DNA of 63,173 nucleotides, filler included, from Octopus bimaculoides (taxonomy: Eukaryota): assembly GCF_001194135.2 (NCBI RefSeq). It is 8 parts of 8 records of this genome, joined end to end, with 100 filler letters (N's around TTAATTAATTAA, not from the genome) between each part and the next. Parts side by side here need not be neighbours in the genome. Positions count along the whole stretch, not along the records: positions 15,357 to 36,899 come from NC_068992.1; 7 more parts are not named here. One strand, given 5' to 3'. A model generated the notes under the pieces. The model worked only from the letters and a program-made list of their open reading frames with translations. It made no database searches and was not told the DNA's origin. Made by a program: the position numbers and the translations under genes. Each line of letters begins with the position of its first letter. The stretch's first letter is position 1. Shown piece by piece: positions 16,190-30,945 of this stretch.

Positions 16190-16335
16190 CAGATTTTGGT
16201 ACAACGCCAGCAATGTTGGTGGAAGAGATGTGTCGATTTGATCGATGTCAGTGTTCAACTGGTACTTATTTTATCGACCCCGAAAGGATGAAAGGCAAAC
16301 TTGTCCTCGGCGGAATTTGAACGATTTGCAAGCTC
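16190..16335 (-). mobile_element. SINE family A fragment
   Basis: ACTGGTACTTATTTTATCGACCCCGAAAGGATGAAAGGCAAA...CGGCGGAATTTGAAC. Confidence 0.8.
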
Positions 16336-16819
16336 AACGTATTAATAACATCAACATCAACAACGACGATGATGATGATGATGATGATGATAAATATGAT
16401 TAAGATTTCTTTTATTCGCTTCAGAAGCATTAACTGAGAGGCGTATTAGAAAGACAGTTTACAATTCATTTGTGGGGTTAACATTTAAAAAAAAAATGAG
16501 ATGAAGAAAAGAAAAGCAAGAAAAAGTGAGATAAAACTTAAACATAAAATAGAAACAGTGAGAACACTTGATAGATGCAGTTCTTCTGATACAAGAGCAC
16601 CTGATCTCCAAGGGCAGAGGTCCTCGCCTCGTGCTGCCATCTACATGCCTGTACTTAGAGTAAATCCATTCACCCTAGCATTATTTGCCTTCGTCACACA
16701 ACTTTAGACTAATAACGCTGTGTAACAATTATTATTATTATTATTATTATTATTGTCTTTGGTCCGTAAGTGCTATTTTCTATTTGCTTCTACCTAGAAA
16801 TCAAAGGAACTGACTAATA

Positions 16820-17097
16820 TTCCCTTCAAACTTTGATTTTGTGACCTGCGCGTTAATGTTTTGAAACTTACGTATCTTTCATTGCATTTCGGACAGACTC
16901 AGCGCTGAGTTGCTAAAACAGAATTTTCTAGAATTTTCTAGAAGTTTCAAGAACTTTCTAAAGGTTTCGTGAATTTCTAGAACGTTCTGGAAACATATAT
17001 AGTAATATAAATACCGGGACCGTAAGCTGAAACATCTCAGTTTAATTTTAGCTGCCCAAGTGGAGACAAGTTTGGGGAAAGCAAAGTTTGAAGGAAA
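16820..17097. mobile_element. TA-flanked MITE carrying a heat-shock promoter layout
   Basis: 16818-16840 TATTCCCTTCAAACTTTGATTTT versus reverse complement of 17077-17099 TATTTCCTTCAAACTTTGCTTTC (20/23 identical, including terminal TA). Confidence 0.65.
16920..17042 (+). promoter_or_regulatory. Heat-shock element array + TATA box + initiator
   Basis: Eight contiguous alternating nGAAn/nTTCn pentamers at 16920-16959, further units to 16993, TATAAATA at 17006-17013 and TCAGTT at 17037-17042. Confidence 0.6.
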
Positions 17098-17199
17098 TAG
17101 CCATTAAAAAAATTTTTTGCTAAGGATAAGCAAATAAAAAATAATAGCTGCTACCCAAGGACAAAAATCGTGTTGCACAGTGTAATTTTTCTACTTTAT

Positions 17200-17382
17200 G
17201 TTCAAGGACGGCAATTTTAAGGAAAAGGGGTTTGCCGACACCATTCAACACCAGTAAGTACTTGATTGGTACTTTATTTTATCGATCTCAAAAGGAGGAA
17301 CGGCAAAGTTGAACTAGGTAGGTTTTGAACTCAGAGCCGGAGTTCAAATATTGCAAAGTATATTTAGCGGTTCTGTCAAGCC
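17200..17382 (-). mobile_element. Old SINE family A copy
   Basis: GGTACTTTATTTTATCGATCTCAAAAGGAGGAACGGCAAAGTTGAAC...TTTGAACTCAGA. Confidence 0.6.
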
Positions 17383-17972: not shown

Positions 17973-18018
<46 letters not shown>

Positions 18019-18098
18019 TATATACTCATGTATATAAATGTTTATATATCTATGAGTTTATATACACTATTGTTCACATCAAATCTGATATCAAACAT

Positions 18099-18144
<46 letters not shown>

Positions 18145-18388: not shown

Positions 18389-18427
<39 letters not shown>

Positions 18428-19030
18428 TATATACTCATGTATATAAATGTTTATATATCTATGAGTTTATATACACTATTGTTCACATCAAATCTGATAT
18501 CAAACATTATATATATGTGTGTGTGTATGTGCATTATCATCCATAACAAAGCTGATATCAAACAATGAATGTAACACATATCAAATAGCAATGCAGCAAA
18601 CATTGGTGTTCATAGCAAAAATGCTATCAGTCCATGAGACATCAGTCTTCCTTAGCAAAGCGATATCAGTAATATCTGTAGTGCTTCCATTAAAGAAACG
18701 ATATCAACGCAATCAGAACTGGTGCCAAGAGCCAAAATATATTATCAGAGCCATCTACATTGATATGCAAACAACAAAGAGGTATCAATGCAGCGTTCCT
18801 CGTCATATACAAGCAGAGCAGAATCTATTTCTTTGCATTCTGCACTGTTATTCATGGAACTAAGCACAAACCAAAAAAAAAAAAAAAAATGATATCAGTT
18901 GAATCTGAATTGGTAGAAGAACATGGCGAATATGTGTGCCACAATATTTTCACAGACTTCTATAGTGATATACGCTATCTTTAGAATCTGCTCTGGTGTC
19001 TAAAGTAAAAATGATATCTGTGGCAATGTG
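17630..19030. repeat. Degenerate minisatellite/satellite relic, ~30-45 bp spacing
   Basis: The motif ATAGC(A/G)A(G/A)A..GATAT(C/A) recurs more than a dozen times, interrupted by dinucleotide runs. Confidence 0.5.
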
Positions 19031-19202
19031 TGTTAATATTGACAGCAATTAATTAGTAACGCAAAAAAAAAAAAAAAAAAAAAGATGACAATGAAAAAAT
19101 AACAAAATAATAAAATCTAGATTTCGATTGGGCAGAAAAACACTCAACATGATCATTAGTAACTGGTTGTTGTGTTATTATTATTATTATTTTTTAAAAT
19201 TC

Positions 19203-19578
19203 TTTTCTTTTACTCGTTTCAGTCATTTGACTGCGGCCATGCTGGAGCACCGCCTTTAGTCGAGCGAATCGACCCCAGGACTTATTCTTTGTAAGCCTAG
19301 TACTTATTCTATCGGTCACTAATGCCGAACCGCTAAGTTACGGGTATGTAAACACACCAGCATCGGCTGTCAAGCTATGTTGGGGGTAACAAACACACAC
19401 ACACAGATATATATACGACGGGCATCTTTCAGTTTCCGTCTACCAAATCCACTCACTGAGGCTTTGGTCGGCCCGAAGCTATAGTAGAAGACACTTGCCC
19501 AAGGTGCCACGCAGTGGAACTGAACCCGGAACCATGCGGTTGGTTAGCAAGCTACTTGCAGCACAGCCACTCCTGTGC
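19203..19578 (-). mobile_element. Full-length tRNA-derived SINE, family B (CORE-like domain)
   Basis: Head GCACAGGAGTGGCTGTGC...GGTTCCGGGTTCAGTTCCAC, CACCTTGGGCAAGTGTCTTCT, internal (TG)n, tail GGTGCTCCAGCATGGCCGCAGTCAAATGACTGAAACGAGTAAAAG. Confidence 0.9.
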
Positions 19579-22124: not shown

Positions 22125-22299
22125 CGTAGGTTGCTCCTAAATCGTATGGTTCCGGGTTCAGTCCCATTACGTGGTACCTAGGGCAATGTCTTCCACTATA
22201 GCTGCGAGCCGACCAAACCCTTGTGAGTGGGTTTGGTGTATCGAAACTGAAAGAAACCCTTCGTGTATGTATGTATGTATGTGTGTGTGTGTGTGTATG

Positions 22300-22360
<61 letters not shown>

Positions 22361-24368: not shown

Positions 24369-25554
24369 NNNNNNNNNNNNNNNNNNNNNNNNNNNNNNNN
24401 NNNNNNNNNNNNNNNNNNNNNNNNNNNNNNNNNNNNNNNNNNNNNNNNNNNNNNNNNNNNNNNNNNNNNNNNNNNNNNNNNNNNNNNNNNNNNNNNNNNN
24501 NNNNNNNNNNNNNNNNNNNNNNNNNNNNNNNNNNNNNNNNNNNNNNNNNNNNNNNNNNNNNNNNNNNNNNNNNNNNNNNNNNNNNNNNNNNTTGTATACG
24601 CAAATTAAATTTAGCCATTGAGGAATGTAGTGGCGGACAAAAAACAAGACAGGAAAACAAACAGAAAAGGCTTTACGGCCAGACGAGAAAAATTATGTGT
24701 GTAAGAACGCGATGAGGCACGGAATATGTATATATACACACACACACACATATGAATATATATACATATACAAATATACAGATGTATGTACATATATATG
24801 TCTATGTGAGTGTGTGCGTGCGTATATGCTTGCTATGTATGTATGTAACCTCTCTCAGTCCGCTTTCCCAGTTCCCGACACGCTCGTTAAAAAGTGCCGC
24901 CAACTCCGACACCACACATGATACTTTTATCATTAAACTCGTCGTTTCAAAGTCATTTCTAATTTTACAACTCACAAAGCGCCTACTTTTTCCATCTCTT
25001 CTTTTTCTTCTAGTTCTTGTAGTTGCTGCTAATGATTTTGAGGCTGTTGTTGTTGTTGTTGTTGTTGTTGTTTCCGCCTGTTTTAAAAAGTAACAACAAC
25101 CAGTTTACTGCTCGCAGTAGGGAGTAAGTACTCTTAGACAGACTCTTGCTGGTTTCTCCTCATAAACTAATCATCATAGACAGAAGAATAAGTCAAAACT
25201 CTTTTAGAAAGATAACTGACGTTCAAGAGTGGTGGAGAAGAAAATGAGCGTCAGGTAGGTTGGCAGGAATTCTTTTTTTATTTTTAACCCGTTGTCTCTT
25301 TTGTCTTCATTTAGTGGTTTTTGAATTTTTAGATAAAATTTTACTAAAAAGCAAAAAGGGAGATAGCTAAAGAACAAACGATTATCTTCTGAACTTCATT
25401 AGCTTACGACTGTTTCTGCTATGATCTGTGGTGGACACATTGTTGAGTGCCTGAGTAACATTTAATAGCTTCATCGGAGCTGCAAATATGAGGTGCAATT
25501 TATTTGGGACAACAAATACATTTAAGCACATATACTGAAAAGCATCATATATAT

Positions 25555-25725
25555 ATATATATACGACGGGCTTCTTCCAGCTTCCGTCGACCAAATCCTA
25601 TCCCCGTGCTTTGGTCAGCCCGAAGCTACAGTAGAAGACACTTGCCCAAGTTGCCTACTGCGTGGGACTGAACCCGGAACCATGCTTTTGGTTTGCAACC
25701 TTCTTAACACACAGCCACGGCTGCG
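25555..25725 (-). mobile_element. SINE family B, 5' part
   Basis: GAAGACACTTGCCCAAG...GGGACTGAACCCGGAACCATG...TAACACACAGCCAC. Confidence 0.85.
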
Positions 25726-27828: not shown

Positions 27829-27975
27829 ACCGTGCTCAAATCCTGTAGAGTTTAATTTTACCTTTCATCTTTTTGAGATCGATAAAAAATAAAGTAGCAG
27901 TCAAATACTAATTGATGTTGTCGATTCTAACCCCCTCTCTCAAGAATTGCTGGCATTGTGCCAAAATTTGAAACT
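27829..27975 (+). mobile_element. SINE family A, 3' part
   Basis: CCTTTCATCTTTTTGAGATCGATAAAAAATAAAGTA...ATTGCTGGCATTGTGCCAAAATTTGAAAC. Confidence 0.7.
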
Positions 27976-30079: not shown

Positions 30080-30275
30080 ATTAGAGACAGCACGTCGGAC
30101 AAAATGTTTAGCGCCGTTTCTTCCGGTTTTACGATTTGAGTTCAATTTCTGCAGAATCGGCTTTGCCTTTCATCCATTTGGGGTCGGTGAAATAAATACC
30201 AGTTGATCACGACGGTCGATATAATCAACTAACTTCTCCTCGCAAAAGTTCAGGCGTTGGTGCCTCTAGCAGAAT
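30080..30275 (+). mobile_element. SINE family A
   Basis: AAAATGTTTAGCGCC...GAGTTCAATTTC...GCCTTTCATCCATTTGGGGTCGGTGAAATAAATACCAGTTG. Confidence 0.75.
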
Positions 30276-30945
30276 GGTTTATACTAAGGACGGCAGAATC
30301 AGTGAAGTGACAACCAAACGGTGAAGTGACAGACTATTGAGATAGTTTACCTTTTTTTTACATTGCGTGTTCAAATCACGGTAGGGGTTGATTTTGCTTG
30401 TAGCTGATGGCGGTGGGNNNNNNNNNNGGGGGGGGGGCGAAGAAGAACTAAAAGTGGCAAAAAGAGACAGAAATATTAAGACCAAGACAGGACAAGGAAA
30501 AGCAGAGAGAACAGACACGCGGACAAAGCAATAAACGAGAACCATCTGCTGATGTAGAGGCTATGGAGTGTTGGTGAGCGAGGTACTAGCATATGTGATT
30601 ACAAATCTAAATTTTTCTTTACAGCTGATAGTCTAATTGGTTATATAAGTGAAGACAATGTTTAACGCTAGTATTGTTGTTATTCGTAACCACGTAGCGA
30701 TGTCTATTTTACAGAATATTAAATATCTATAGATATGTAATTACTGAACGTGGAATGCTTCAGACTGCAAACCATTGTACCAATGAAATAAAATAACAAC
30801 GCTATAAGAAATTTACTATCAATTGTTAATATTATCATCGTTATTATAACTAGTGGTGTTTTGTACTTGTTGTTGTTGCAACTGTCTCGAGAATAATTGT
30901 TTTCATAACTTTGTATGTTTCCTTCGCACTCTAATATATATTCAT

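What the first reader, a model, noticed from the sequence alone, without database searches (positions are those of the whole stretch)
16818..17099. MITE carrying a complete heat-shock promoter (HSE array, TATA, Inr)
Seen: within 23-bp TA-ended inverted repeats lie a perfect 14-bp palindrome (ACTCAGCGCTGAGT, 16897-16910), eight contiguous alternating nGAAn units plus about six more, TATAAATA 13 bp after the last unit, and TCAGTT with its A 33 bp after the TATA start. Known: three units bind one HSF trimer; HSE-TATA-Inr is the hsp70-type layout; Helitrons spread HSEs in Caenorhabditis. Inference: a mobile, stress-inducible promoter cassette that could wire loci into the HSF regulon or drive stress-induced transcripts, here antisense to the candidate minus-strand gene. 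I am not aware of this being described for a cephalopod MITE, but could not search.
Basis: partly seen in the sequence, partly recalled or inferred. Interest (0 to 1): 0.8.

Follow-up and report, generated by a model that had tools for sequence, protein, structure and literature searches.

The report
Heat-shock promoter inside octopus transposon-like repeat
A non-coding stretch of an octopus-type genome holds a textbook heat-shock promoter sitting exactly in the middle of a 467-base transposon-like inverted repeat; whether the unit has ever moved or multiplied could not be tested, so it is a good candidate, not yet a proven case, of a mobile stress-inducible promoter.

Summary
These are a 15-unit nGAAn/nTTCn array with 14 good units, TATAAATA 13 nt after it, TCAGTT with its A 33 nt from the TATA start, and a perfect 14-nt palindrome.

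Within the array the GAA/TTC cores barely vary (2 of 45 positions), while the free "n" positions vary a lot (12 of 31; p=2e-4). That is the pattern expected of HSF sites, not of a neutrally drifting minisatellite.

The proposed MITE borders are wrong. The 22-nt inverted repeat is only the best-kept inner part of arms about 104 nt long (16716-16839 and 17078-17182, 75% identical). These arms end sharply at CGCTGTG.../...CACAGTG, are flanked by TAA on both sides, and abut a SINE. The unit is therefore 467 bp and does not look like a TA-flanked Tc1/mariner MITE.

The window is Octopus-type DNA, because it shares SINEs with O. vulgaris and O. bimaculoides loci. No second copy of the unit could be found, because no cephalopod genome was searchable, so mobility and copy number remain untested. 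No HSP gene or any recognisable coding sequence lies in the 21.5-kb piece.

Verdict: a real heat-shock-type promoter in a transposon-like frame. The closest precedents are TE-borne HSEs in Caenorhabditis Helitrons and plant ONSEN.

The parts
16713..16715 (.). Left flanking TAA, a candidate 3-bp target-site duplication
   Evidence: The same trinucleotide flanks the right end at 17183-17185. The chance of a 3-nt identity is about 0.02, so this is weak on its own.
16716..16839 (+). Left arm of the long inverted repeat; terminal sequence CGCTGTGTAACA
   Evidence: A gapped alignment to the reverse complement of 17078-17182 gives 73 of 97 identical once the microsatellite is removed. The two best inverted segments out of 3200 diagonals share one register. 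Shuffle z-scores are 12 for the whole arms and 7 for the middle part. The flanks outside the arms give z=-0.2.
16728..16754 (.). (ATT)9 microsatellite that expanded inside the left arm
   Evidence: TRF reports 9 perfect copies. It accounts for the only large gap (19 nt) between the two arms.
16818..16839 (+).
   Evidence: It is 20 of 22 complementary to 17078-17099.
16897..16910 (.). Perfect 14-nt palindrome ACTCAGCGCTGAGT, 10 nt upstream of the HSE array
   Evidence: There are 7 such palindromes in the piece, so its significance is modest and its function is unknown.
16920..16959 (.). Distal HSE block of eight contiguous perfect alternating nGAAn/nTTCn units
16960..16974 (.). Middle of the array: one defective unit (AAAGG), then TTTCG and TGAAT
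16975..16992 (.). Proximal HSE block TTCtaGAAcgTTCtgGAA (four units), shifted 1 nt out of phase with the distal block
17006..17013 (+). TATA box TATAAATA
   Evidence: It belongs to the only TATAAA-to-TCAGTY pair in the 21.5 kb, on either strand.
17037..17042 (+). Initiator-like TCAGTT; the predicted start is the A at 17039 and transcription would run rightwards
   Evidence: The start site is inferred, not measured.
17078..17182 (+). Right arm of the long inverted repeat; terminal sequence TGTTGCACAGTG. Any transcript from 17039 would contain it
   Evidence: The terminal 12-mer pairs 10 of 12 with 16716-16727, and 2 of 500 shuffles do as well.
17183..17185 (.). Right flanking TAA, a candidate target-site duplication that is also the first bases of the adjoining SINE end

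Best explanation
The interval is the core of a 467-bp non-autonomous DNA-transposon-like unit (16716-17182) in an Octopus-type genome.

Structure: two imperfect arms of about 104 nt enclose a 238-nt centre. The arms end in CGCTGTG.../...CACAGTG and are flanked by TAA/TAA. The centre is a complete RNA polymerase II heat-shock promoter. It has an array of 14 usable nGAAn units (room for about 4 HSF trimers), a TATA box 13 nt downstream, and an initiator 33 nt further on.

Proposed mechanism: on proteotoxic stress, HSF1 trimers bind the array cooperatively and drive initiation near 17039. The transcript runs rightwards through the right arm and out into the flanking DNA, which here is a SINE with no recognisable gene. 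At this locus the product would therefore be a stress-induced non-coding read-out RNA, or the array would act as an HSF-dependent enhancer.

The promoter is most simply the internal promoter of a once-autonomous element that survived an internal deletion (left arm, promoter, deleted ORF, right arm).

Shown by sequence: the motifs, their spacing, the constraint pattern in the array, the extent and sharp ends of the arms, and the host lineage. Inferred: HSF binding, heat inducibility, the start site, and past mobility.
For: - The HSE array is far above chance: 8 matches against 0.17 expected.
- Differences between the 10-nt units fall at the free positions (12 of 31) and spare the GAA/TTC cores (2 of 45). 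Fisher p=2e-4; binomial 7.5e-4.
- It holds the only TATA-to-Inr pair at promoter spacing in the 21.5 kb on either strand. The joint chance next to the array is about 5e-4.
- If the arms were identical at insertion, their 25% divergence predicts about 7 changes in the 59 motif positions. Two are seen, p about 0.02.
- The inverted arms are in one register and significant in each part. Similarity ends abruptly at 16716 and 17182, with TAA flanks.
- The unit has no coding capacity.
- As single-stranded DNA it folds better than all 100 shuffles, z=-4.4.
- The right end abuts the simple-repeat end of a SINE family that is shared with O. vulgaris and O. bimaculoides. An AT-rich tail of this kind is a plausible insertion target.
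- Precedent exists. Caenorhabditis Helitrons carry HSE arrays, are bound by HSF-1, and have a heat-induced transposase mRNA (PMC6927752, PMC6765114). Extended HSEs bind HSF-1 DNA-binding domains cooperatively and mark dedicated heat-shock promoters (PMC9148306).
Against: - No second copy was found. There is none in the 21.5-kb piece and none in 48 kb of Octopus DNA or 21 kb of another cephalopod. Metagenome, viral and prokaryote scans gave only chance hits. Translated-ORF searches found nothing. No cephalopod genome could be searched as a whole, so this absence says little.
- The candidate target-site duplication is only 3 nt in AT-rich DNA (p about 0.02).
- The arms are only 75% identical, so the unit is old and surely immobile now.
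- Nothing recognisable lies downstream to be driven.
- AATAAA/ATTAAA signals lie 64 and 94 nt after the predicted start.
- There are no binding or expression data.
- The first two units are identical, so replication slippage has contributed to the array.
Confidence: 0.5

Rival explanations
1. This is a fixed host regulatory element rather than a mobile one. It would be the heat-inducible promoter or enhancer of an unannotated gene or long non-coding RNA whose first exon starts near 17039. The flanking inverted repeat would come from a local inverted duplication.
For: - The promoter architecture is complete and looks constrained.
- No other copy was found anywhere.
- A consensus splice donor GTAAGT lies at 17254, 215 nt after the predicted start.
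- Octopus genes have long introns, so a coding exon could lie outside the piece (my own knowledge).
Against: - The arms stop sharply and symmetrically with matching TAA flanks, right at a SINE end. That is what an insertion looks like.
- There is no HSP or other recognisable coding sequence in about 20 kb downstream.
- Polyadenylation signals lie 64-94 nt after the start.
Confidence: 0.2
2. A younger 282-bp TA-flanked Tc1/mariner-type MITE (16818-17099, TIRs 20 of 22) carries the promoter and landed in the exact centre of an older palindromic element of about 185 bp (16716-16817 plus 17100-17182).
For: - The inner 22 nt are much better matched (91%) than the rest of the arms (about 70%).
- TA dinucleotides sit at both inner borders.
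- A poorly matching patch of about 17 nt separates the inner and outer blocks.
Against: - The outer and inner blocks lie on exactly the same diagonal (i+j=33917). The insertion would therefore have had to hit the precise centre of symmetry of the older element.
- With small gaps the 17-nt patch is partly alignable, so the arms look continuous.
- The TA dinucleotides are themselves part of the inverted repeat.
Confidence: 0.15
3. This is a non-functional look-alike. A 10-bp palindromic minisatellite (TTCTAGAA-type) expanded by slippage in the centre of a palindromic repeat, and the TATA and Inr matches are incidental in AT-rich DNA.
For: - TRF calls a period-10 array of 6.4 copies with 74% matches.
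- The first two units are identical.
- The piece is extremely rich in microsatellites.
- TATAAA occurs 50 times in the piece.
Against: - Unit-to-unit differences avoid the six HSF-contact positions (p=2e-4). Neutral slippage and decay do not predict that.
- The TATA-Inr pair at canonical spacing is unique in 43 kb of strand and sits on the array.
- The array survives a 1-nt phase slip with a complete 4-unit HSE proximal to the TATA.
Confidence: 0.12

Closest known systems
HSE-bearing Helitrons of Caenorhabditis (Helitron1_CE, HelitronY classes; PMC6927752, PMC6765114)
   Same: A DNA transposon family carries arrays of heat-shock elements, in some copies more than 100. HSF-1 binds them on heat shock. 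The element's own transcript is heat-induced, and non-autonomous copies confer inducibility on neighbours.
   Different: Helitrons have no terminal inverted repeats and make no target-site duplication. This unit has arms of about 104 nt and TAA flanks. Here a TATA and initiator accompany the HSEs, so the unit carries a whole core promoter. Copy number and HSF binding are unknown here.
hsp70-type heat-shock promoters (Drosophila hsp70 as the reference; my own knowledge)
   Same: Both have contiguous inverted nGAAn units directly upstream of a TATA box at about -30, with a TCAGTY initiator. The proximal HSE is centred about 55 nt upstream of the start.
   Different: No chaperone gene follows. 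The array is unusually long, at 15 units in one run. The whole promoter is framed by an inverted repeat.
ONSEN/ATCOPIA78 LTR retrotransposon of Brassicaceae (my own knowledge; reviewed in PMC7329337)
   Same: A mobile element has a promoter containing HSEs, so that heat activates the element and can make neighbouring genes heat-responsive.
   Different: ONSEN is a class I LTR element that encodes its own proteins and lives in plants. This unit is a small non-coding class II-like unit in a mollusc.
Stress-responsive MITEs such as rice mPing (my own knowledge; PMC5056178 reviews the field)
   Same: A small non-autonomous TIR element carries cis-elements that can render adjacent genes stress-inducible.
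   Different: As far as I know, mPing supplies enhancer-like motifs and not a full TATA/Inr promoter with a long HSE array. It has hundreds of copies with documented mobility. None of that is shown here.
Drosophila 87C alpha-beta / alpha-gamma heat-shock repeats (my own knowledge)
   Same: Duplicated hsp70-type promoter segments drive heat-induced non-coding transcripts from repeated DNA.
   Different: Those arose by local tandem duplication of an hsp70 5' region next to hsp70 genes. Here no HSP gene is nearby and the frame is an inverted repeat.

Membership tests
HSF-dependent (hsp70-type) heat-shock promoter | At least three contiguous inverted nGAAn units | tested here: met
   There are 8 contiguous perfect units, and 14 good units of 15 in all. 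The 8 pattern matches compare with 0.17 expected.
HSF-dependent (hsp70-type) heat-shock promoter | TATA box about 30 nt upstream of an initiator, with the HSE immediately upstream of the TATA | tested here: met
   TATAAATA lies at 17006 and the TCAGTT A at 17039 (33 nt). The last HSE unit ends 13 nt before the TATA. This is the only such pair in the piece.
HSF-dependent (hsp70-type) heat-shock promoter | HSF binding and heat-induced initiation | not testable with these tools
   No expression, ChIP or binding data are available.
HSF-dependent (hsp70-type) heat-shock promoter | Drives a chaperone or other stress gene | tested here: not met
The best ORFs hit no Pfam domain.
MITE / non-autonomous class II transposon | Terminal inverted repeats with defined ends | tested here: met
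   The arms are 16716-16839 and 17078-17182, 73 of 97 identical. The flanks beyond them give z=-0.2.
MITE / non-autonomous class II transposon | Target-site duplication | tested here: inconclusive
   TAA lies on both sides (16713-16715 and 17183-17185). It is only 3 nt, with a chance of about 0.02.
MITE / non-autonomous class II transposon | Small size and no coding capacity | tested here: met
   The unit is 467 bp. The longest stop-free stretch is 74 aa and has no homologue.
MITE / non-autonomous class II transposon | Many dispersed copies in the genome | tested here: inconclusive
   There is one copy in the 21.5 kb and none in 69 kb of other cephalopod DNA. Whole cephalopod genomes were not searchable, so the sample is far too small to decide.
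Tc1/mariner (Stowaway-like) MITE, as implied by 'TA-ended' TIRs | The inverted repeat ends at a duplicated TA | tested here: not met
   Inverted-repeat similarity continues about 80 nt outside the TA dinucleotides, in the same register.
Helitron | No TIRs, 5'-TC...CTRR-3' ends with a 3' hairpin, insertion between A and T | tested here: not met
   The unit has long inverted arms and CRCTGTG/CACAGTG ends.
CACTA/Chapaev (CMC) or PIF/Harbinger superfamily | 3-bp target-site duplication (TWA for PIF/Harbinger) and CACT(A/G)-type termini (CMC) | tested here: inconclusive
   The TAA flanks and the CACTGTG-type terminus fit. However, no transposase-bearing relative is available, and the feature definitions come from memory.
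Neutral 10-bp minisatellite | Head-to-tail copies whose differences are spread evenly over the unit | tested here: not met
   The array is tandem, with period 10 and 6.4 copies. But 12 of the 14 differences fall in the 4 free positions (p=2e-4).

The most novel reading that the evidence does not exclude
Octopus genomes may harbour a family of TIR transposons that carry a complete HSF-driven promoter. That would mean one of two things. Either an autonomous DNA transposon in cephalopods has its transposase switched on by heat stress, or its short derivatives have scattered ready-made stress-inducible start sites that wire new loci into the heat-shock regulon. The intact HSE cores, TATA and Inr in an old copy with 25% arm divergence would then mark this copy as co-opted by the host.
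Probability: 0.25. Interest if true: 0.65.

Novelty: new member of a known kind. Interest (0 to 1): 0.42.

Why it matters
If the unit proves multi-copy, it would be an animal TIR-transposon counterpart, from outside the nematodes, of the Helitron and ONSEN stories. In those, a mobile element distributes heat-shock regulation. Here the unit would carry a whole core promoter and not just binding sites.

Cephalopod genomes are transposon-rich, and their regulatory evolution is poorly understood. A ready-made inducible promoter of about 120 bp from an octopus would also be a practical candidate for heat-inducible transgenes in cephalopods.

If it is single-copy, it is simply an unannotated heat-responsive promoter or enhancer, which is of local interest only.

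Tried and rejected
1. Other copies in the piece. The TIR core with up to 3 mismatches finds only the two arms, and BLAST of 16600-17300 against the piece finds only itself and SINE matches.

2. Public DNA scans.
- The 16-mer TIR pattern in metagenome and viral contigs gave more than 100 single hits each. All were chance, and BLAST of the element against every fetched locus gave only (ATT)n and seed-length matches.
- A paired-TIR pattern in prokaryote genomes gave 3 hits against about 2 expected. None had HSEs or any similarity to the element.

3. Protein-index route. The 74-aa stop-free frame across the array and a 76-aa SINE-derived ORF found nothing. Exact look-ups of two window ORFs found nothing. 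Octopus non-coding DNA is evidently not in that index.

4. Octopus DNA by way of rhodopsin. This gave O. vulgaris, O. bimaculoides and one other cephalopod locus. That was useful for placing the lineage, but the 69 kb held no copy of the element.

5. An early idea that the arms run on to about 16662 and 17233 was rejected. The outer similarity is confined to the terminal 12-mer, the right flank from 17183 is a SINE, and the flanks alone give z=-0.2.

6. The idea of a bidirectional promoter was rejected. There is no TATA on the minus strand left of the array, and the minus-strand TCAGTT at 16806-16811 has no TATA about 30 nt upstream.

7. An A-rich or ATG-free leader as support for a heat-shock 5'UTR did not hold up. 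A content is 37% against 32% background, and an ATG-free run of 159 nt has p=0.12. Neither is significant.

8. Rfam at gathering thresholds found nothing in the piece.

9. Literature searches found no paper on HSE-bearing transposons in cephalopods or molluscs in the held library.

10. An exact 12-mer match of the right terminus occurs in O. vulgaris (L235:16429) and O. bimaculoides (L237:16548). The surrounding sequence shows no further similarity and there is no partner terminus.

Full report
**What is there**

- The perfect palindrome ACTCAGCGCTGAGT lies at 16897-16910.
- From 16920 there are eight contiguous perfect alternating units: AGAAT TTTCT AGAAT TTTCT AGAAG TTTCA AGAAC TTTCT.
- Then come one defective unit (AAAGG), TTTCG and TGAAT, a 1-nt phase slip, and a clean four-unit block TTCtaGAAcgTTCtgGAA (16975-16992).
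- TATAAATA lies at 17006, 13 nt after the last unit.
- TCAGTT lies at 17037, with its A at 17039, 33 nt from the TATA start.

The three-unit pattern GAANNTTCNNGAA occurs 8 times in the window. All 8 are in this array, against 0.17 expected from shuffles. It occurs nowhere in 24 kb of Octopus vulgaris DNA.

TATAAA followed by TCAGTY at promoter spacing occurs once on either strand of the 21.5-kb piece, and that one occurrence is here. A rough joint chance of such a pair next to the array is 5e-4.

The 14-nt palindrome is real but not remarkable on its own. There are seven of that quality in the piece.

**Binding-site array or minisatellite?**

TRF reports a period-10 repeat of 6.4 copies, and the first two units are identical. 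Slippage has therefore certainly played a part. An HSE array is by definition a 10-nt tandem repeat, so the two descriptions do not exclude each other.

What separates them is where the units differ. Of 14 differences from the unit consensus AGAATTTTCT, 12 fall in the four free positions (12 of 31 sites) and 2 fall in the six GAA/TTC positions (2 of 45 sites). Both core changes are in the one defective unit. Fisher p is 2e-4. Neutral decay of a minisatellite would spread the changes evenly, whereas constraint on HSF contacts predicts what is seen.

This test was made after the region had been picked for looking like HSEs. It is therefore supportive evidence, not a genome-wide significance level.

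**The frame: not the MITE as drawn**

The 22-nt inverted repeat (16818-16839 and 17078-17099, 20 of 22 complementary; the 23rd position is a mismatch) is real.
- Among 3200 diagonals, the best and second-best inverted segments lie on the same diagonal (i+j=33917), and so does a further one.
- A gapped alignment extends the arms outward.
- The only large gap between the arms is an (ATT)9 microsatellite that expanded in the left arm.
- I first thought the arms ran on to about 16662 and 17233. That was wrong. From 17183 the right flank is a copy of a SINE family, and the flanks outside 16712 and 17186 show no inverted similarity (z=-0.2).

The repeat therefore ends sharply at 16716 (CGCTGTGTAACA...) and 17182 (...TGTTGCACAGTG). 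The terminal 12-mers pair at 10 of 12 positions, and 2 of 500 shuffles do as well. With the microsatellite removed the arms are 73 of 97 identical, and TAA lies immediately outside both ends.

The unit is thus 467 bp with arms of about 104 nt. It cannot be a TA-flanked Tc1/mariner-type MITE unless a young 282-bp element landed in the exact centre of symmetry of an older palindromic one. I keep that nested reading as a rival at low probability. From memory of superfamily features, a 3-bp TAA duplication with CACTG-type ends fits CACTA/Chapaev or PIF/Harbinger better, but I could not test this.

The centre of symmetry of the arms (16958.5) falls within 2 nt of the centre of the HSE array. By position alone that has a chance of about 3% (my arithmetic). 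I note it without building on it.

**Surroundings and host**

The piece is non-coding and packed with microsatellites, SINE copies and assembly gaps. The ten best ORFs hit no Pfam family at a meaningful level, and Rfam finds nothing. tblastn with HSP70, HSP27, DNAJ, ubiquitin, HSP90 and HSP10 queries gives only noise. There is thus no chaperone gene downstream and no evidence for the 'candidate minus-strand gene'.

To place the host, I fetched the rhodopsin loci of O. vulgaris and O. bimaculoides and a third cephalopod contig. The piece shares several interspersed repeats with the two Octopus loci at 72-83% identity over 100-400 nt, but only microsatellites with the third.

**Is it mobile and multi-copy?**

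I could not answer this question, and the finding turns on it. No cephalopod genome was searchable as a whole.
- There is one copy in the piece.
- There is none in the 69 kb of cephalopod DNA I could fetch.
- Metagenome, viral and prokaryote scans gave only chance hits.
- Translated-ORF searches found nothing.

The evidence for a past insertion is structural. It consists of sharp symmetric ends, the TAA/TAA flanks (chance about 0.02), and a position at the simple-repeat end of a SINE, where the joined flanks read like that SINE's end. This is suggestive, not proof.

**How it most likely works**

By sequence this is an hsp70-type promoter. It has room for roughly four HSF trimers on one face-to-face array. 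A proximal four-unit HSE is centred about 55 nt upstream of the predicted start, and TATA sits at -33 with a consensus initiator. Extended HSEs bind HSF-1 DNA-binding domains cooperatively and characterise dedicated heat-shock promoters in C. elegans (PMC9148306).

Transcription would start near 17039 and run rightwards through the right arm into the flank. Polyadenylation signals lie at 17103 and 17133, the first ATG at 17198 opens only 19 codons, and a GTAAGT lies at 17254. At this locus the product is therefore probably a short or read-out non-coding RNA, or the array works as an HSF-dependent enhancer.

The order of parts (left arm, promoter, 39 nt, right arm) is what an internal deletion of an autonomous element with an HSF-driven transposase gene would leave.

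If the arms were identical at insertion, their 25% divergence predicts about 7 changes in the 59 core, TATA and Inr positions. Two are seen, p about 0.02. This is a hint that the promoter has been kept by selection since insertion, but it rests on that assumption.

**Comparison with what is known**

TE-borne heat-shock elements are established. Caenorhabditis Helitrons hold most of the genome's HSEs, some copies carry more than 100, HSF-1 binds them, the Helitron transposase mRNA is heat-induced, and neighbouring genes gain inducibility (PMC6927752, PMC6765114). Plant ONSEN and MITEs such as mPing are further examples (PMC7329337, PMC5056178, and my own knowledge).

This unit works like those but is not a Helitron, because it has TIRs, and not an LTR element. 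It differs in carrying a full TATA/Inr core promoter. I found no paper on anything similar in cephalopods or molluscs in the held library.

**Verdict**

- The heat-shock-promoter reading is well supported by sequence.
- The MITE reading is supported in kind, as a transposon-like inverted-repeat frame, but wrong in its borders and implied superfamily, and untested for copy number.
- The antisense-to-a-gene remark is unsupported.
- Novelty is a new member of a known kind. Interest is moderate, and it would rise if a genome-wide search shows a family.

Noticed in passing
window 19199-19557, 22128-22314, 25547-25714, 16198-16322, 17183-about 17385, 27836-27920, 30157-30286: These are copies of SINE-like interspersed repeats shared at 72-83% identity with the rhodopsin loci of Octopus vulgaris (L235) and O. 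bimaculoides (L237). They are absent from a third cephalopod contig (L236). This places the window in an Octopus-type genome.
   Followed up: partly
window 17980-18122 and 18389-18531 (also 18043-18106 and 18452-18515): Two 143-nt stretches are 99-100% identical and lie about 409 nt apart on either side of a short run of N. This looks like a gap-flanking assembly duplication rather than biology.
   Followed up: no
window 16897-16910, minus strand: Read on the minus strand, the palindrome contains GCTGAGTC. That is one mismatch from an AP-1/Maf-type antioxidant-response core (GCTGAGTCA, from memory). It could be a second stress-responsive site next to the HSEs, or it could be chance.
   Followed up: no
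window 16806-16811, minus strand: A second TCAGTT initiator match lies just outside the inner block of the left arm, facing leftwards, but with no TATA about 30 nt upstream.
   Followed up: partly
window 16767-16781 and 17092-17106: There is an off-register inverted match (15 nt, 80%) of a motif around GCTATTTYCT. Weaker copies lie at the mirrored positions, so each arm may hold two related sites. That would resemble the inner and outer binding sites of IR/DR-type transposon ends.
   Followed up: no
L235:16429-16440 and L237:16548-16559: The right terminus 12-mer TGTTGCACAGTG matches exactly downstream of the rhodopsin gene in O. vulgaris and at the orthologous place in O. bimaculoides, next to a long (TA)n tract. 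There is no further similarity and no partner terminus. It could be a relic end or chance.
   Followed up: partly
window 17103, 17133, 17198-17257, 17254-17259: Downstream of the predicted start lie ATTAAA and AATAAA signals at +64 and +94. The first ATG, at +159, opens a 19-codon ORF (MFKDGNFKEKGFADTIQHQ) whose end overlaps a consensus GTAAGT splice donor. That part lies inside the flanking SINE.
   Followed up: no
window 16958-16959: The centre of symmetry of the long arms (16958.5) falls within 2 nt of the centre of the HSE array. Before the 1-nt deletion in the array, the arms and the array's own dyad would have shared one register. The whole unit may have begun as a single palindrome centred on an HSE.
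   Followed up: partly
L236 (ENA ERZ21867824, contig ctg122970l): A 450-kb contig filed under a metagenome assembly carries a cephalopod rhodopsin (78% identical to the octopus protein), and short ORFs are called on its non-coding DNA. Host genome sequence is therefore present in that 'metagenome' record.
   Followed up: no
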